A DNA stretch of 64,000 nt, from NCBI GenBank assembly GCA_965240325.2, contig OZ251246.1:1-64000 (forward strand). The letters are read 5' to 3'. A model generated the notes under the pieces. It did not search any database. It saw nothing but the letters and a program-made list of their open reading frames with translations, and was not told the origin of the DNA. This DNA is from Rebecca billardiae RCC1528. Its lineage: Eukaryota; Protista; Haptophyta. Positions 8,431-16,761 of the stretch are shown in pieces; position 1 is the stretch's first letter, and the number at the start of each line of letters is the position of its first letter. The translations under genes and the position numbers were made by a program.

Positions 8431-8809
8431 GCGACTCGTCAGTGACTTACCGACGCGGCAGCCGACGGCAGTAAGTACACGTATATGTATACCGGGCCAG
8501 ACTACTCGGACGAGTCCGCCCGGGACGGAGCGCGATCGCAACTATACGCCGGTGGACGACGATCGACGCGCGATCGATATGCAGCATGACGATGCTGTAT
8601 ATAGGCGCGCTGCGCGTGCCATGGCTGCTCGGCTGATCGGCGATACCGGTGGCAGTGACGCCGCCTGACCGCGTGATGCTGCGACGCGCCTGCGACTCTA
8701 CGACTGCTGCGCTAGCTCATCATGATGGCGGGCGCGCGGGCTATATATATACTGTATAGTATGTAAGCACATACGCCATCAGCATGGAGGATCACGCGCT
8801 TGCATCAAG

Positions 8810-10994
8810 TCAGGAGTAGGACGACGCGGGCCGGCCGCGCGGCGCGCGCAGCTCGCGCTGGATCTGCTCGAGCGACTTGCCCTTGGTCTCGGGCACGCAC
8901 CACGCGCCGAGCGCGGCGGTGGCGGCGCAGACGAGCGCGAACGGCGCGAACGCGTACGGCCCGAGCGCGTCCGCCACGCCGAGGAACAGCTGCCCCACCA
9001 GCAGGTTGGCGAGCCAGTTGGCCGACGCGGCGACCGACGCGGCGAGCGCGCGCGTCTCGGCGGGCATCAGCTCGGACGGCAGCAGCCACGGCACGGGGCC
9101 GAGCCCGACGCCTGCGCGCGCGCGCGCGCGTCGGGGCGCGCGCGTCAGCAGCGCACCCACGCGCGCGCGCGCGCGCGCAACAGACGGCGGCGCGCGCACC
9201 GAACGCGGCGACGAACGCGACCATGCTCGAGATGAGCAGCGGCGCCGCCCAGCGCGCGCCGCCCGCCGCGCCGACGAGCGCGAGCGTGAGCGCGGCGCCG
9301 GCGGCGGCCATGGCGGCGGCGGAGGTGACGAGCAGCGCGCGCCGGCCGGCGCGGTCCATCAGGTACACGCTCAGCGCCGTCACGCCCACGTTCCCCCCGT
9401 TCATCAGCACGGCGATGGCCGTGATCGTCGCCTCGGAGAAGCCGCTCGCGTGCAGGAACGTCGCCGAGTAGTTGAAGGCGTTGTTGATGCCCGAGAGCTG
9501 CTGCAGCACCATCAGCGCCATGCAGATGGCGAGCGGGTAGGCGGTGGGCGGGCGGAGCAGCCGGCCCAGCCGCGCGCCGCCGCGCGCCGCCGCCCGCCCC
9601 CCGCGCCGCTCCGGCTGCCGCTGCGCGCCAAAGCCGCGCCAGCCGCCGAGCTCGGGCGTCTTTGGCGGCGGCTCGGGCGGCGAGCCAAACGGCCGGCCGC
9701 CCTCGGCGTCGGCGGCGAGGAGCATGGCGTCGAGCTCCTCGAGCACGACCTCGTCGTCGGGCGCGGCGTCGCGCAGCAGCGTGAGCGTGCCCACCGCCGC
9801 GTCCACCTCGCCGCGCAGGCAGTGCCAGCGCGGCGACTCGACGAGCGCGCCGCCGAGCGCGAGCTGCAGTAGACCGGGCAGCGCGACCGCGCCCAGCACG
9901 AGCGGCCAGAGGCGCGGCGTGCCGAGCGCGGCGGGGAGGCCGAGGAGCTGCGCGACGAACATGGCCGAGACGAACGTCAGCTGGAACGCCGTGCCCAGCG
10001 TGCCGCGCAGGTGCGCCGGCGCCACCTCGCCCAGGTACATGGGCACGACGACGGTCGAGCCGCCCGACGCGGCGCCCGAGAGCGCGCGCCCGGCGCACAG
10101 CAGCGCGAGCCGCGCCCAGCACGGGCCGGCGGGCGCGGGTGCGCAGCAGCGCGGCAGCGCGCACGCGGCCTGCGCCGCCGCGCCGAGCGTGTACACCCCC
10201 GCGCTCGCGAGCAGGAAGCGCCGCCGCCCCCACGCGTCCGCGAGCGAGCCCGACGCGTTGCAGCCGAGCAGCGCGCCCGCGCAGAAGACGGACACGCACG
10301 TGGACCACGCGGTGTCGGCGCCGACGCCGGCGCCGACGGGGATGCCGAGCGCGGCGCGCTGCACGCCGGCCTGCGTGTTCATGCACCCGTTGTTGTACCC
10401 GAACTGCACCGCGGACAGCAGCGCGACGCCCGCCGTGCGCAGCAGCGCGCGCGTGAGGCCCGCCTCCTCGTCCACGTAGCAGTGCTCGTGCAGCTCGGGC
10501 GAGGCGGGCTCGGCGGCGCGGGCGGAGGGCGCGGAGCCGAGCGCGCCCTCGGCCAGCCGGTTCGCCGCGATCACGTCGATCACCGCCAGCCGCAGGTACG
10601 ACTTGCGCCGCGCGATCCCGCCGCCGCCGCCGCCGCCCGCGTCCGGCGCGAGGTTGACGGCGAGCGACGCGCGCGTGGCGATGCGCGAGGTGACGCCGGC
10701 GTGCGCGACGTACGCGAGGTCGGCGAGGGCGGAGCGCTTGTCGAAGGTGACCAGCCGCGGGATGTTGTGCAGGTCGTGCTCCGTCAGCCGGCGCTGCCCC
10801 CTCAGCAGCCCCTGCTTGAGGTCGCGCAGCCCCGAGAGCGCCGTGTCGGCCGCCTCGTGCTCGAGGCACGCGGCGGCGCTCGAGACGTGCGGGATGGTGT
10901 GCCCGGCGAGCGGCACCGCCTCGTCCGAGTCGTGCCGCCGCGCGCGCGCGATCGGCGGCCCGCGCGCCGGCCGGTCGCTGTCGTCGTCGAGCAT
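8810..10994 (-). CDS. MFS sugar porter (GLUT/SLC2-like hexose transporter), 2 exons (intron 9112-9199)
   Basis: Sugar-porter motifs are present: QFGYNNG, LADAWGRR, VVPMYLGEVAPAHLRG, VESPRW, QQLSGINNAFNYS, MDRAGRRALL, G-V-GLGPVPWLLPSEL, NWLAN and VPETKGKSLEQI. A GT..AG intron restores the frame. Start taken at MLDDD (10994). Confidence 0.93.
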
Positions 10995-11166
10995 TGCCGT
11001 CTGCGCGGGCGGGCGAGCCCTCCGTCGGGGCGGCGCGGGCCGAGAGACCAACTGTCCGGCCGCGCGCTCGTCCCCCCGTGGTCCGGGCGACTGGAGACGG
11101 CTAGGCGGACTTTAATTTTCCTTGTTTTTAAAAAGAGAGAAAGAAGGAAGGAGGAGAGACGAGCAG

Positions 11167-14100
11167 CTAGTCGCTCTCCTCCTCCGCCTCCTGGAGCCAC
11201 GTGACAAACGCGGCGGCGCCCTTGCGCGCGGCGACGTGCGCCGCCTTCGCCTCGGGGTGCGTCGCCGCGTTTCCGCCGAACGGCGTCCCGTACCACGCCA
11301 CGACCGCGCCCTCCTCCAGCACGTCCGCGTCGTACAGCCGCTTGAGGATCTGCGAGCCCTTGGGCGCGAGCTCGGCGCACTCGACCGAGACGAGCCGCTC
11401 GAGCGCGGCCAGCATGGCCGCCTGGCAGCGCGAGGGCTTGACGCCGCGCTCCTTGGCCGCGCCGAGCAGCGCCGCCGCCGCCTGCACGCGCGGCTTCTCC
11501 TTGAGCTGCGCGACGATCGAGCCGTCAAAGATGCCCTGCACCGAGCGCGCGCGGTGGGCGGCGCGGCGAGCGTGAGCGCGCGCGGCGCGGCGCGGCGCGG
11601 CGCGGCGCGGCGGCGCGGCGCACCCGCATCGCCGTGCCGATGACCTCGTCGGTCTGCAGCCCCTCGCCCACGCCGAGGGCGAGCGCGTCGCGGCACGCCT
11701 CGCGCAGCCCGCGCTTCGCCTCCGCGCCCTCCGCCTGCGCCGCCGCGCACCGCACACCCGCGTCGAGCGCAGCGCGCACGCGCGCGCCCACGGCCGCGGC
11801 CGAGGGCGGCGCGGCGCCGAGCGTCGCGAGCCGCATCGTGCGCATCGACAGGAAGACGGCGCGGCCGTCGCGGCGGAGGCGGCCGAGGAACTGCTGGTGG
11901 TCCTCCCACGAGAGCGCGGCGCCGAGCTCCTCCGTCATGATCAGCGTGTCCACCGCCACCGAGTCCGTGCCGTACACCGACGAGTAGTCCACGACCACCG
12001 TGTGGATCGGCGGCAGCCGCGCGGCAAACGCGCGCTCGGGCGCGTGCAGCAGCGTCTGCGTGTACAGGCGCGCGACGAGCGGCTCGGTGCCCTCGGAGGC
12101 GGCGTACGCGACGCCGGCGGAGAGCATGAGCAGCGTCGCGTCGTCCACGCCCTCCGCCTCCTCCAAGTCCACCAGCAGCCCCTGCCGCAGCCGCAGCCGC
12201 GTGTCCGCGCCGGCCGCGCCCGCGTCCTCGGGCGCGTCGTCCGCGTCGGTCTTGCGCGAGCGCTCGCGCTCCTTGTCGGAGAGCTTGGCGGCGCCGCGCA
12301 GCTCGGACTTCTTGCCCTTGAGGGCGTGCAGCCGCTCGGTCCACGCGTCCGCGTCGGCCGCGCCCGCGAGCTGCAGCGCGAGCTCGCGCGGCCGCACCGT
12401 CGCCACCATCGTCACCCCCGTGCTCGACAGCGCGCCCACGAGCCCGCCCGGCCGGCGCGCCTTTGTCGTCGGGTCGAGCGTCGCCAGCTTGCGCGCCGGC
12501 TCGTCCCACGCGGCCCTGCGGCGGCGGGGGCGGGGCGGCGGCGGGGCGCGCGCGTGAAGGGGCTGGGCGGGTGGCGCGCGGGCGCGTACGCGCGCGCGCG
12601 CGCGCGCGCACCGGAGCGTGGCGAAGCGCTGCGCGGTGAGCGAGGCCAGCGCCTCCTCGCACGCCTCGCGCGCGCCGCGCAGCGAGTCGTGCAACGCCAT
12701 CCAGCTCGAGGCGGCGCGCGCCGCCTCGTCCGCGTCGTCGGCGGCGGCGGCGGCGGCGGTCGAGTCGGGCGGGGCGTCGTCGGCGTCGGCGAGGGCGAGG
12801 AGCTGCGCCGCGTGCTTGGGCGTGAGGTGGCGCAGCAGCAGGCTCGTGCGCAGCGAGCCGCGCTGCGACGCCGCGTCGGCGAGCTCGCCTGCGCCGCGCG
12901 GCGCGCGCGCGCGAGCGAGTCAGCCAGCGCGCCGCCGGCGCCGGCGCGGCGCGCGCGCGCGCGCGCGCGCGCGGTGCGCACCCCAGTCGCGCACGAGGCG
13001 CAGCAGCGAGACGGGCGCGAGCGTGTCCGCCGCGCGGTCGAGCAGCGCGAGCTGCGCGGTGGGCAGCTCGTACGGCGGCAGCGCGATCGTCGAGCGCACG
13101 GCCGCGCGCCCGCCGCCGTACCACCACTTGGGCAGCGCGCCCCAGCTGCCGAGCGTCGCCGAGGCGAGCACGGTGGTGGCGGGCGCGTGCCGCATGATCG
13201 AGGCGACGGCGGCGGCGACGCGGCCGTTGAGGTGCACGCCCATGTTGGGCTCGTCAAGGTAGAGCACCAGCGAGTCCGGGTGGCACGCGTGCCCGGCCCC
13301 AAACTTGCCCGCCGCCGCGTCGGAGAGCAGCGCGGCCGTCGCCCAAATGTCTGCGATGATCACGGCGGGGCGGCCGCGGCCGCGGTCCGCGTTCTGAGCG
13401 CCGTTGTGCGCGGCGAGCGCGAGCTGGTCGGCGATGGGCCCGGAGCCCGCCGAGCCGTCCTTGGCCTTCTTCGTGCGCACCGAGTACGGGCGGCGCACCT
13501 GCACCGCGCGCGGCGCGGGCGAGGGCGTGTCAGGGCGTGCGCCGCGCGCCGCGCCGCGCGCGGCGGCGGCGGCGGCGGCGGCGGGCTTACCTGGAATGCC
13601 GACGCGGCGCCGTCCGCGGCCGCGGCCGTCCAGTAGACGAGGCGGTGCGCCTCGCACTGCACGCCCACCGCCTTGAGCACCTGCGCGGCGCCGCGCGTGG
13701 AGGGGGAGGGGGGAAGGGTCAGACGGGTGCGCGCACCCAGCACACACCGCGGCGCAGGCACACACACACACACACACACACCTGCTTTGTCGGCACGGTG
13801 TACAGCAGACACGCGCTCGGGTGCGCGCGCTGCAGCAGCTGCATGCCGAGCATGAGCGCCGTGAACGTCTTGCCCGAGCCGGTGGGCGTGGAGAGCACGA
13901 GGTGCAGCGGCAGGTGCGCGCCGCCCGACGCCGCCACGTGCGTGAGCTGCGCGTCCACCATGTCGAGCAGCACCTGCTGATGCCGGTACCGCATCGGCCG
14001 GCCCAGCAACGTGCCGCGGTTGGCGGAGGTGAGGGCAGTGTGCGCGGCGTCGCGGCGCGCGGAGGCGGGCGCGGCGCGCCACGCGGCCTCGCCCGCGGCC

Positions 14101-15633
14101 CAGAGCAGCGAGCCCGGCCCCGTCGCCGCCGCGTACTTGCGCAGCAGCAGCAGGTCCGCCGCCCGCCCGCCCTCCACCGCCTCGAGCCAGCGGCCAAGCA
14201 ACGCCGCCTGCGCCGGCCCGGCCGCGCCCTTGAGCGCGTCGAGCGCGGCGGCGCGCTTCTGTTTGTCGAGCTCGGCCTTGCGCGGCTTGTCCTTGCGCGC
14301 CTCGGCGAGCTCGGGCTCGAAGCACGCCTTGAGCACCTCCTTCGGCGCGCGCGCGTCGCGCAGCGGGAACAGCGCCTCGAACAGCCGCGTGCGCGCCGCG
14401 CCGCTCGGGTCGGCGAGCGCGGACGCGGCGGCCTCGGCGGCGGCGTCGTCGTCCGCGCCGCCGCCGCCGCCCGCCGAGATTGCAATCTCGGCGGGGTTGG
14501 AGAGGTCGACGTACGGCGCGATCTCGCCCATCAGCCGGAACGCCGGCGCGCCCTTCGCCGCCGCCACCACGTCCTTGTTGTCGATCTCCGCCCAGTCCTC
14601 CGCCGAGAGCGACGAGCCGGTGTCGATCATCAGCTTGACGCCGCCCACGTGCGCGACCGCGGCGGCGGAAGCTTCGGCCGAAGCTTCGGGGCCGTCGGTG
14701 GCGGCGAGGGCGGTGCGCGCGTCGGACGCGGCCGCCTCGGAGGCGAGCAGCGCCGCCGCCGCCTCCGCCTCCGCCGCGTCCGCCGCCGCCACCGCCGCCG
14801 CCGCCTCGGCCGCCGCGCCGTCCGCGTCGTCCAGCGAGGCGGCGAGCGGCGGCGCGCGCGGCGGCACCGTCGCGGGCGCGAGCGCGGCGGGCTCGTGCGG
14901 CGGCGCGGAGAGGAGGAGCTCGCGGCAGAGCGCGAGGTCGTGCGCGCCGCGCGCCGACGCGAGGAGCAGCGCGTGCGCCGCCACCACGTCGCGCGCCACG
15001 CTCGCGTGCGCCGCGCCCGGCGCGAGCGCGTGCGCGCCCGCCGGGCCGACGCGCGCGCCGCCCGCGCCGAGCGCGGCGGCGAGCGCATCGTAGCACGCGG
15101 CGGCGTCGGCGCCGGGCGGCAGCGCGGCGAGCTCGGGCGCGAGCGCGAGCGCCGCGCCGTCGTACGGCGCCACCGCCACGCCCGGCGCGTCCACCTCCGG
15201 CGCGAACCAGCCGCCCGCCGCCGGCGCCGAGATTGCAATCTCGGCGGCGGCCGGCTCGGCGGCCGGCGGCGGCGCGGCGGCGCGCGCGCGCGCGGCGGCG
15301 AGGGCGGCGGCGTGCGCGGCGGGCGGCGCGTCGACCATGCAGCGCAGCGCGCCGGCGCTCCCGTCCCACTCGTACACCGGCAGCGGCCCCGCCAGCTCGC
15401 CGCCGCCCGCCGCCGAGCCGTGCGCGCCGAGCGCGGCGCGCGGCGGGTCGGCGCGCAGCGCGGCCGCGTACGCTGCGCCGCGCGCGCCGCGCAGCACGCG
15501 CGCGGCGTGCGCGCCGGCGGCGGCGGCGTCGGGCGCGGTGTCGCGCGCGTCGGCGACCGCCGCGTCGAGCGCGCCCGCGCCCGCCGCCGACGCGAAGCCC
15601 GACGCCACCGCGTCGAGCAGCGCGCGCGGGCAC

Positions 15634-15668
<35 letters not shown>

Positions 15669-16761
15669 CGCGGCGGGCAGCGGCGGCGGCGCGGCGGGCG
15701 GCGCGGCGGCCGCGGCGGCCGCGGCGGCGGCGAGCACGCCGATCGCGCCGCGCAGCGCGCCGAGCTCCTTCTCGCCCACCTCCGACGGCGGCACGCGCAG
15801 CGTCCCTTCGAAGAAGGCGCGCGGCGGCACGGCGGGCGCGCCGCCCAGCCCGGCCTCGGAGAGCCACTGACCTGCGGCGAGCGCGGGCGAGCGCACGGCG
15901 GGCGGGCGCGGCGCGCCGCGCGGGCGGCCGCCGCCGTAGAGCGCGGCGACGGCGTAGCGCAGCTCGGGGCCCACCGCGCCGCGCGCGTGCGGGCACCACC
16001 GCCGGCGCAGCGCGCCCCAGCACGCCGCCCCCTGCCACACGTGCAGCGTCGCGCCGCCCGTGCAAGCCGCCACGTCCGACACCGTCGCGAGCCGCTCGGC
16101 GCCGAGGACGATGTACTCGGCGGAGGCGGAGAGGATGGCGAAGACGGGCGCGCTGCTGCGCGTCGCCTCGTGGTACGCGAGCAGCTCTGCGCGCGCGCGG
16201 CGGCGCGCGCGGCGGCGCGTGAGCGCGCGCGCGCGCGCAAGCGCGAGCGCGCGCGCGCGAGGGGCAAGCTGGGCGCGAGATTGCAATCTGGGCGCGGCGG
16301 CGCGCACCGGGCAGGTGGGCGAGGCCCGAGCCGGCGACGGTGGTGGGCCCGGCGGCGGGGGCGCGCCACTCCACGCCGAGCTCGGCGCACACCGCCGCGA
16401 GCGCCGCGTGCCCCGCCACCGCCTCGTCCTCCTCCGCGCCGTCGCGCGCGGCGCTCGCGGCGAGCCGCGCGCGCGCCTCGGCCGGCGCGGCGGCGCCGCC
16501 GGCGAAGACGACGAGCTCGAGGCCGGTGTCGCGCAGCGCGCGGAAGAAGTCGAGCAGCTCGAGGTACAGCACCCGCGCCGCCGCGTGCCCGTGCGCCGAG
16601 CGCCCGCGCGCGGGCGCGCACCGCTCGGCGCAGTGCGCGATCACGGCAGGGCCGTCGACGAGCAGCGCGCGCGCGGCGCGCGAGCGCGCCTGGCCGCGGG
16701 TGAGCGTGACGATGGTGGGGCGGACGTCGCGCTGGAACGCGGTGAGCAGCGCCTGCGCCAT
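11167..16761 (-). CDS. DDX60/Ski2-like SF2 helicase with an N-terminal PIN-like region and a C-terminal W2 (eIF5C) domain; 7 exons
   Basis: Introns 16187-16307, 13681-13781, 13499-13590, 12889-12981, 12516-12611 and 11536-11623 (all GT-AG) join into one frame. Helicase motifs: LVLSTPTGSGKT (I), YTVPTKQ (Ia), LYLDEP (II), LASATL (III), QQFLGRLRRDG (VI). The N-terminus (LLVDGPAV..FFRALRDTGLELVVF) is PIN-like. The C-terminus (ILKRLYDADVLEEGAVVAWY..FVTWLQEAEEESD) is a typical W2 domain. Confidence 0.8.

What the first reader, a model, noticed from the sequence alone, without database searches (positions are those of the whole stretch)
11167..16761. PIN-like + DDX60-type helicase fused to a translation-factor W2 domain
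Seen: a single 7-exon frame runs from a PIN-like N-terminus through SF2 motifs (with atypical DEPN at motif II and GRLRR at motif VI) into a clear W2 domain, joined by an 88-nt GT-AG intron (11536-11623). Established: W2 domains of eIF5, eIF2B-epsilon and 5MP bind eIF2-beta; DDX60 is a Ski2-like antiviral helicase. Inference: an RNA-surveillance or antiviral helicase tethered to the translation-initiation machinery. The PIN acidic residues look partly lost, so that region may be catalytically inactive.
Basis: partly seen in the sequence, partly recalled or inferred. Interest (0 to 1): 0.7.

Follow-up and report, generated by a model that had tools for sequence, protein, structure and literature searches.

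The report
Algal nuclease-helicase fused to W2
This is a real seven-exon algal gene from an uncharacterised family that joins a (here inactive) DNA/RNA-cutting domain, an unusual RNA-helicase-type motor and a docking domain otherwise found in translation start factors; giant viruses carry the same motor, so it may mark an unstudied link between helicases and the start of protein synthesis.

Summary
On the minus strand, seven exons (16761-11167) joined by six GT-AG introns of 88-121 nt give one open frame of 1667 codons. Each exon matches single-ORF relatives in order.

There are three modules:
- **N-terminus:** an XPG/FEN1/EXO1-type nuclease domain of the PIN-like superfamily. In this gene only one of five catalytic carboxylates checked survives.
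- **Middle:** an SF2 helicase. Its odd motif II, DEPN, is invariant across the family, so it is a hallmark and not decay.
- **C-terminus:** a complete W2 HEAT domain, closest in sequence to the eIF5 C-terminal domain, with both acidic/aromatic boxes kept. Intron 6 splits this domain, which argues against a separately transcribed W2 exon.

"DDX60-type" is not supported. The protein has a single cassette, no winged-helix or ratchet domain, and no specific sequence or fold affinity to DDX60.

Every named cellular relative is a green alga, listed in databases only as "W2 domain-containing protein". The nearest other helicases are giant-virus proteins. Two relatives lie on contigs that carry giant-virus capsid genes, and their tails look W2-like.

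The proposed function, a helicase docked on eIF2 or the 43S complex, is inference. The scan had already noted the 14-bp palindrome seen in this gene, elsewhere in this genome.

The parts
16308..16761 (-). Exon 1 (ATG at 16761-16759): first half of the XPG/FEN1-like nuclease domain
   Evidence: Aligns with the N-termini of family members. blastp hits P0012, P0007 and P0095. Keeps the first catalytic Asp (LLVDG) but has Gly at the second site.
16187..16307 (-). Intron 1, 121 nt, GT..AG; contains one copy of the palindrome AGATTGCAATCT (16278-16289)
   Evidence: Homology runs across the junction.
13782..16186 (-). Exon 2. Holds the second half of the nuclease domain (about 16184-15770), an Ala-rich but partly conserved middle region, and the start of the helicase (HQ motif, Walker A TPTGSGKT 13889-13866, motif Ia VPTK)
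   Evidence: No intron candidates of the local type inside it. Two in-frame palindrome copies at 14477 and 15230.
13681..13781 (-). Intron 2, 101 nt, starting with a (GT)n run
   Evidence: The end of exon 2 and the start of exon 3 map to adjacent residues in six homologues.
13591..13680 (-). Exon 3 (30 codons): conserved VLKxVGxxCEAHxxxYWTAA segment of RecA1
   Evidence: 65-90% identical to homologues.
12982..13498 (-). Exon 4: rest of RecA1 with motif II DEPN (13255-13244) and motif III SAT (13162-13154)
   Evidence: 40-53% identity to eight homologues, E down to 6e-48. DEPN and LASATL are invariant in the family. The language-model look-up gives DEAD/ResIII-type clusters.
12612..12888 (-). 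Exon 5: family-specific helical insert between the two RecA domains (LLLRH motif)
   Evidence: Helices at residues 301-403 of the homologue's model.
11810..12515 (-). Exon 6, first about 235 codons: RecA2 with motifs IV-VI (VVDYSSVYGTD..., QQFLGRLRRDG; GRLRRDG at 11884-11864)
   Evidence: phmmer found 65 relatives, top E 5e-63.
11624..11809 (-). Exon 6, last about 62 codons: first helices of the W2 HEAT domain
   Evidence: Aligns with the part of the homologue's model (residues about 630-700) that superposes on the eIF2B-epsilon C-terminal domain.
11536..11623 (-). Intron 6, 88 nt, GT..AG, phase 0; lies inside the W2 domain
11167..11535 (-). Exon 7: rest of the W2 domain with acidic/aromatic boxes 1 and 2, an acidic tail and the stop codon (11169-11167)
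   Evidence: Pfam W2 E 4.4e-17, 62.3 bits against a cut-off of 30. eIF5 C-terminal domain E 1.7e-8, with LYDADVLEE...W and F..WLQEAEEES aligned to the eIF5 boxes.

Best explanation
This is one intact gene of a conserved, uncharacterised family. Its constant core is an unusual single-cassette SF2 helicase (motif II DEPN) fused directly to an eIF5/eIF2B-epsilon-type W2 HEAT domain. Many lineages, including this one, add an N-terminal XPG/FEN1-like nuclease domain, which here has lost its catalytic carboxylates and probably serves only to bind nucleic acid or protein.

Shown: the gene structure, the three folds, conservation of the helicase motifs and of the W2 acidic/aromatic boxes, and relatives in green algae and in giant viruses.

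Inferred: the W2 domain docks the motor on the eIF2-beta N-terminal tail and eIF2-gamma, or on the 43S pre-initiation complex, as the W2 domains of eIF5, eIF2B-epsilon and 5MP do. The ATPase then remodels or inspects RNA or RNP at translation initiation. In orthologues with an intact nuclease, the protein may also cut the bound RNA.
For: - **Gene model:**
- **Family:** 65 relatives of exon 6, 20 of them at E<1e-30. Helicase plus W2 occurs in one ORF in more than 15 relatives. These include transcript-derived proteins of Dunaliella, Mantoniella and Tetraselmis.
- **Helicase motifs:** all invariant in the family and kept in the window.
- **W2:** Pfam 62.3 bits. The boxes are nearly identical to those of eIF5. 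In the homologue's model, residues 630-847 match the eIF2B-epsilon C-terminal domain at Z 16.3, rmsd 2.8 A, with 172 of 174 residues aligned.
- **Nuclease fold:**. Loss of carboxylates.
- **Core versus add-on:** the nuclease domain is absent in Mamiellales and the viral type while helicase and W2 persist, so helicase plus W2 is the functional core.
- **Precedent:** kDDX60, a helicase bound to the 43S complex that contacts eIF5 and eIF3c (PMC7773551).
Against:
- No binding, ATPase or substrate data exist for any family member.
- The XPG/EXO1-type fold is typical of DNA enzymes.
- W2 domains also bind partners other than eIF2, so the docking target is not proven.
- Both structure models are of homologues, not of the window protein.
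Confidence: 0.6

Rival explanations
1. A DDX60/Ski2-like antiviral RNA helicase: an orthologue or close relative of DDX60 that has gained a W2 domain.
For: - Foldseek ranks Ski2-like helicases first (MTR4 6e-8, Ski2, Hel308, Brr2), with kDDX60 at rank 16.
- The family profile touches ASCC3 and Brr2 at motifs I-Ia, E 4.5e-5.
- kDDX60 binds 43S complexes.
Against: - Motif II is DEPN, not DExH.
- There is no winged-helix or ratchet domain and only one cassette; the W2 domain follows RecA2 directly.
- The VIA aligner ties DEAH, NS3, DEAD-box and Ski2-like cores at Z 15-17.
- Giant-virus helicases match far better, E 1e-16 and TM 0.50-0.55 against 0.38-0.40 for Hel308-like proteins.
- Pfam finds only weak DEAD/ResIII signal at the Walker A motif.
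Confidence: 0.08
2. A DNA repair or replication nuclease-helicase, in which an EXO1/FEN1-like 5' nuclease works with a DNA helicase and the W2 domain is merely a general protein-binding HEAT module. The giant-virus relatives would then serve viral DNA metabolism.
For: - The N-terminal fold is that of EXO1, FEN1 and XPG, which are DNA enzymes, over about 320 residues.
- Hel308 and Pol-theta helicases are among the fold hits.
- Giant viruses encode many DNA helicases. On contig L001 the relative lies about 5 kb from a PolX/AP-endonuclease gene.
Against: - The W2 boxes are almost identical to the eIF2-binding boxes of eIF5.
- W2 domains are described only in translation factors and their regulators (PMC9177959).
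- The nuclease domain is dispensable: it is lost or inactivated in several lineages while W2 is kept.
Confidence: 0.15
3. An eIF2 decoy or sensor. The W2 domain competes with eIF5 and eIF2B-epsilon for eIF2, as 5MP/BZW does. The helicase acts as an RNA sensor, in the manner of RIG-I-like receptors, that switches this inhibition on during stress or infection. The viral copies would subvert the same node.
For: - RIG-I-like receptors, DRH-1 and Dicer helicases are among the fold hits.
- There is a helical insert between the RecA domains.
- The W2 boxes are conserved.
- Giant-virus relatives have a W2-like tail (hhalign probability 81%).
Against: - There is no specific similarity to the RIG-I-like receptor insertion (Hel2i) or C-terminal domains.
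- The evidence for a W2 tail in the viral proteins is modest, and Pfam does not detect one.
- There are no expression data.
Confidence: 0.12
4. A gene-model artefact: the W2 exon, or the nuclease exons, belong to a neighbouring gene, and the long frame is an accident of extreme G+C content.
For: At 77-83% G+C all six frames are open for kilobases. No RNA evidence was obtained.
Against: - All seven exons match single-ORF relatives in order, with exact junction adjacency at intron 2.
- The W2 fold starts in exon 6 and ends in exon 7.
- Exon 7 has no upstream start of its own; the frame before it is Arg-rich junk that begins with GTG.
- The same three-domain order occurs in Mesostigma, Cymbomonas, Chlamydomonadales and Tetraselmis.
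Confidence: 0.04

Closest known systems
W2 domains of eIF5, eIF2B-epsilon and 5MP/BZW (Pfam PF02020)
   Same: The C-terminal HEAT domain is the same fold, with both acidic/aromatic boxes and an acidic tail. eIF5 gives E 1.7e-8, and the eIF2B-epsilon C-terminal domain gives Z 16.3 with 172 of 174 residues aligned on a homologue's model.
   Different: Here the domain is attached to a helicase and a nuclease-like domain, not to a GAP, GEF, MIF4G or bZIP module. Binding to eIF2 is untested.
Giant-virus (Nucleocytoviricota) 'DEAD-like helicase family' proteins
   Same: The helicase core is the same, including the helical insert.
- Sequence relatives of 25-32% identity to the window's exon 6 keep DEPN, LASATL and the other motifs, and lie on contigs with giant-virus capsid genes.
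- Fold matches to Catovirus, Tupanvirus and related proteins reach E 1e-16.
- Four viral clusters in the ESM Atlas match at TM 0.50-0.55.
   Different: The viral proteins have no nuclease domain. Their tail is at best a diverged W2 (hhalign probability 81%, not detected by Pfam). They form a separate clade.
XPG/Rad2 family 5' nucleases (EXO1, FEN1, XPG, GEN1); compare the pseudo-nuclease Mkt1 (from my own knowledge)
   Same: The N-terminal fold and motifs match (MGxxGL, VDG, VxxD, TDDSDxxxxG, H3TH region). Foldseek E 1.6e-8 over about 320 columns. A family profile hits EXO1 at E 7.5e-4.
   Different: The window protein keeps one of five carboxylates checked. Pfam XPG_I scores stay below the gathering cut-off. 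The domain is fused to a helicase.
DDX60 / kinetoplastid kDDX60 and other Ski2-like helicases
   Same: Both have SF2 RecA cores and a PTK-type motif Ia. kDDX60 sits on the 43S complex and touches eIF5 and eIF3c (PMC7773551), a functional analogy to a helicase that carries a W2 domain.
   Different: This family has a single cassette, DEPN instead of DExH, and no winged-helix or ratchet domains. It shows no specific sequence or fold affinity to DDX60.

Membership tests
W2 domain (PF02020; eIF5 / eIF2B-epsilon / eIF4G type) | Profile score above Pfam's gathering cut-off | tested here: met
   Exon 7: 62.3 bits against a cut-off of 30, E 4.4e-17.
W2 domain (PF02020; eIF5 / eIF2B-epsilon / eIF4G type) | Complete W2 HEAT fold | tested here: met
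   Tested on homologue P0002, not on the window protein itself. Model residues 630-847 against 3jui: Z 16.3, rmsd 2.8 A, 172 of 174 residues aligned. 1paq gives Z 15.3 and DAP5 gives Z 14.5. The tail of exon 6 and exon 7 align to this part.
W2 domain (PF02020; eIF5 / eIF2B-epsilon / eIF4G type) | Acidic/aromatic boxes 1 and 2 | tested here: met
   LYDADVLEE..W and F.TWLQEAEEES align with the corresponding segments of human eIF5. The boxes are defined in PMC7773551.
W2 domain (PF02020; eIF5 / eIF2B-epsilon / eIF4G type) | Binds the eIF2-beta N-terminal tail / eIF2-gamma | not testable with these tools
   Needs pull-down or co-purification.
XPG/Rad2/FEN1 nucleases (PIN-like superfamily) | Fold of the nuclease core with the H3TH region | tested here: met
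   Tested on the Mesostigma homologue. Model pLDDT 80.8, pTM 0.81. EXO1, FEN1, XPG and Rad2 match at E 1.6e-8 to 1e-6, probability 1.0. The window exons align to it.
XPG/Rad2/FEN1 nucleases (PIN-like superfamily) | Significant sequence-profile match | tested here: inconclusive
   The family profile hits EXO1 at E 7.5e-4. Pfam XPG_I matches 4 of 11 N-termini, best E 0.0019, all below the cut-off of 24.9 bits. No hit for the window's own exons.
XPG/Rad2/FEN1 nucleases (PIN-like superfamily) | Metal-binding carboxylates (EXO1 D30, D78, D171, D173, D225 equivalents) | tested here: not met
   The window has D, G, A, E, G at these sites. Chlamydomonadales and Cymbomonas keep most of them. The domain here is a probable pseudo-nuclease.
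SF2 helicases | Motifs I, Ia, II, III, V, VI and two RecA domains | tested here: met
   Motifs are invariant in 16 family members and present in the window. The RecA core matches solved SF2 helicases at Z 15-17 with 300-350 residues aligned.
DDX60 / Ski2-like helicases | DExH motif II | tested here: not met
   DEPN, invariant in the family.
DDX60 / Ski2-like helicases | Winged-helix and ratchet domains after RecA2 (two cassettes in kDDX60) | tested here: not met
   In the model the W2 HEAT domain starts right after RecA2, at about residue 630. Alignments to Ski2-like proteins end near residue 630. kDDX60 architecture is taken from PMC7773551.
DDX60 / Ski2-like helicases | Specific sequence or fold affinity over other SF2 groups | tested here: not met
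   Profile hits are confined to motifs I-Ia. Foldseek E-values for Ski2-like, RIG-I-like and kDDX60 proteins all lie at 6e-8 to 3e-6. Viral helicases score 1e-16.

The most novel reading that the evidence does not exclude
The helicase-W2 module shared by green-lineage algae and giant viruses is an unrecognised accessory translation-initiation factor. An ATP-driven RNA remodeller is plugged into eIF2 or the 43S complex through an eIF5-like W2 domain, and it has passed between hosts and giant viruses as part of the contest over the translation apparatus. In some algae an active 5' nuclease rides with it, giving initiation-coupled RNA cleavage.
Probability: 0.3. Interest if true: 0.8.

Novelty: new variant of a known kind. 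Interest (0 to 1): 0.62.

Why it matters
W2 domains are described only in core initiation factors and their mimics: eIF5, eIF2B-epsilon, eIF4G/DAP5 and 5MP/BZW. A conserved helicase that carries an eIF5-like W2 domain would be a new way of bringing an ATP-driven motor to eIF2 or the 43S complex. It would be comparable in effect to kDDX60 or DHX29, but achieved by a domain fusion.

The same motor occurs widely in giant viruses, with the closest fold matches in Mimiviridae-type viruses. This gives a testable link between virus-host conflict and control of initiation in algae.

The family has easy experimental entry points. Chlamydomonadales (relatives of the model alga Chlamydomonas) and Ostreococcus carry orthologues.

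Tried and rejected
- **Exon 1 word search:** a search within a long same-frame ORF found nothing. The window's own protein does not seem to be in that collection.
- **PDB sequence search:** phmmer of single helicase exons against PDB gave only noise.
- **Pfam on the window's N-terminal exons:** no PIN or XPG hit. Two pieces (window:15700-16185 and 13782-14431) were out of frame, so their blanks do not count. The in-frame ORF scan covers those regions.
- **IMG/VR viral contigs:** three scans, with exon 4, exon 6 and a family alignment, found no relative. The viral relatives came from ENA contigs instead.
- **Pfam W2 in the viral tails:** not detected.
- **Extra introns in the Ala-rich part of exon 2:** none of the local type.
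- **Literature:** no paper combined DDX60 with PIN-like, or W2 with helicase and giant virus, and no paper described this family.
- **Joined product:** the joined spliced protein was never sent to a search or fold tool. A script joined the exons only to count stops, length and composition. Folds spanning exon junctions were made on database homologues.

Full report
**Observation**

The region is extremely G+C-rich (77-83%). All six frames are open for kilobases, so an open frame alone means little here.

The seven exons are 16761-16308, 16186-13782, 13680-13591, 13498-12982, 12888-12612, 12515-11624 and 11535-11167. The six introns are 88-121 nt long, all GT..AG, and mostly GTGCGC...GCAG. Their phases are compatible. 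The frame has 1667 codons with a single terminal stop. The 88-nt intron at 11536-11623 is exactly as described.

The script joined the exons only to count stops, length and composition. The joined product was not printed, saved, or sent to any search or fold tool. All searches were done exon by exon, by reference.

No RNA reads could be laid on the gene, and read laying was not used.

**Support for the model from homology**

A full HMMER scan with exon 6 found 65 relatives. Twenty had E<1e-30 and the best were about 50% identical.

Exon-by-exon blastp against eight full-length relatives shows all exons in order. The end of exon 2 and the start of exon 3 fall on adjacent residues in six of the eight. 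The other junctions fit within a few residues or across variable linkers.

The Ala-rich middle of exon 2 still carries conserved patches, such as VYEWD and GWF.PEV. It holds no intron candidates of the local type.

**The three modules**

*W2 domain.*
- Exon 7 passes Pfam's W2 model (62.3 bits against a cut-off of 30).
- It is closest in sequence to the eIF5 C-terminal domain (E 1.7e-8). Both acidic/aromatic boxes are nearly identical to those of human eIF5.
- I modelled helicase plus tail of the homologue P0002 (pLDDT 83.3, pTM 0.80). Residues 630-847 superpose on the eIF2B-epsilon C-terminal domain (3jui: Z 16.3, rmsd 2.8 A, 172 of 174 residues aligned). They also superpose on yeast eIF2B-epsilon and DAP5.
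- The last 62 codons of exon 6 align with the first helices of that domain. Intron 6 therefore lies inside the W2 domain. This argues strongly against a separately transcribed W2 exon.

*Helicase.*
- An alignment of 16 family members shows invariant HQ, TGSGKT, VPTK, DEPN, LASATL, YG.DC and Q..GR.R..G motifs. All are present in the window.
- DEPN is therefore a family hallmark and not decay.
- The core is a standard pair of RecA domains with a family-specific helical insert between them.

*N-terminal domain.*
- The family starts with MG.QGL, then LLVDG, VV.D(S/G) and LTDDSD..V.G.
- A model of the Mesostigma homologue (pLDDT 80.8) matches EXO1, FEN1, XPG and Rad2 over about 320 columns (E 1.6e-8, probability 1.0).
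- The family profile hits EXO1 at E 7.5e-4 with the catalytic motifs aligned.
- Pfam XPG_I matches only weakly.
- In the window protein only the first of five carboxylates checked is kept: D, G, A, E, G. Chlamydomonadales and Cymbomonas keep most of them. The Tetraselmis clade is also degenerate. The whole domain is missing in Mamiellales, one metagenomic clade and the viral type.

**Is it DDX60-type?**

No specific support was found.
- The family profile reaches Ski2-like proteins (ASCC3, Brr2) only over motifs I-Ia. RIG-I-like receptors and Dicer score close behind.
- Foldseek puts MTR4, Ski2 and Hel308 first at 6e-8. RIG-I-like receptors and kDDX60 (rank 16) fall in the same narrow range.
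- The VIA aligner ties Prp2, NS3, FRH and eIF4A at Z 15-17 over the RecA core alone.
- There is no winged-helix or ratchet module and only one cassette. kDDX60 has two cassettes, two winged-helix and two ratchet domains (PMC7773551).

**Relatives**

All named cellular members are green algae:
- Ostreococcus and Mantoniella, where the protein is helicase plus W2 only, about 1000 aa.
- Tetraselmis, Dunaliella, Volvox, Gonium, Pleodorina, Edaphochlamys and Chlamydomonas sp. UWO241.
- Cymbomonas and Mesostigma.

Databases call them hypothetical or "W2 domain-containing protein". Several come from MMETSP transcriptomes, so the fusion exists at the mRNA level in relatives.

In a tree of the exon-6 region the window groups with the Tetraselmis clade (support 96/89). 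Other agents' notes call this genome a haptophyte-type alga. I did not test the organism's identity.

A second clade of 780-880-aa proteins is 25-32% identical to the window's exon 6 and has no nuclease domain. It is separated from the cellular clade with support 99/94. Two of its members lie on ENA contigs that carry giant-virus major capsid genes (L001 and L003). Their tails align with the last W2 helices (hhalign probability 81.5%, E 1.1e-5, 41 columns), but Pfam does not detect W2 there.

By fold, the closest non-family proteins are giant-virus helicases:
- Catovirus, Gaeavirus, Harvfovirus, Yasminevirus and Tupanvirus at E 1e-16 to 1e-13.
- Four Nucleocytoviricota clusters of the ESM Atlas at TM 0.50-0.55 on the helicase part, against 0.38-0.40 for archaeal Hel308-like proteins.

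IMG/VR scans found no relative.

**Mechanism**

Shown: the architecture, the conserved ATPase motifs, the conserved W2 boxes and the dispensable nuclease domain.

Inferred: the W2 domain docks the protein on the eIF2-beta tail and eIF2-gamma, or on the 43S complex. This is how eIF5 and eIF2B-epsilon use the same boxes (PMC7773551). The helicase then remodels or inspects RNA at initiation.

The rivals considered are a DNA-repair nuclease-helicase, an eIF2 decoy or sensor of the 5MP type, a true DDX60 relative, and a gene-model artefact. Each is listed with odds in the Rival explanations section.

**Novelty**

I found no paper that describes a helicase-W2 or nuclease-helicase-W2 protein. A review of HEAT domains in initiation lists W2 only in eIF4G, DAP5, eIF5, eIF2B-epsilon and BZW (PMC9177959).

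The family is present in databases but uncharacterised. I rate it a new variant of known kinds: a new architecture and a distinct helicase family with giant-virus kin.

Noticed in passing
window 14477, 15230, 16278, 17968, 26466, 40486 ... 63614 (21 sites): The 12-nt palindrome AGATTGCAATCT, often extended to CCGAGATTGCAATCTCGG, occurs 21 times against 0 expected. Flanks are not conserved. Several copies sit just after GTGCGCG intron starts. Two lie in frame inside exon 2 of this gene, where they read AEIAISA. Another agent's note (s1-363213) describes the same word elsewhere in this genome.
   Followed up: partly
window 8805-11051, minus strand: The gene downstream of this one reads like a sugar-porter-type MFS transporter (PESPRW and PMYLGEVAP motifs in the ORF translation). 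This was judged by eye only.
   Followed up: no
window 13781-13760: Intron 2 begins with a (GT)n microsatellite of about 11 units, directly at the donor site.
   Followed up: no
L001:1-22535 and L003:1-23432: These giant-virus contigs carry the helicase relative. Nearby genes include the major capsid protein, a PolX/AP-endonuclease fusion, an FtsJ methyltransferase, many RING proteins, ribose-phosphate pyrophosphokinase-type genes and a ubiquitin gene.
   Followed up: no
P0011 (Volvox carteri XP_002956573, 5748 aa) and P0005/P0193 (JGI): The Volvox model places this helicase at residues 5104-5333 of a 5748-aa protein, which is probably a merged gene model. Two JGI fragments of the family are named 'flagellar hook-basal body complex protein FliE', an evident mis-annotation.
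   Followed up: no
same genome, another piece (note s1-353163): A first-reader note reports an ABCF ATPase fused to a W2-like C-terminal domain in this genome. If real, W2 fusions to ATPases may recur here.
   Followed up: no
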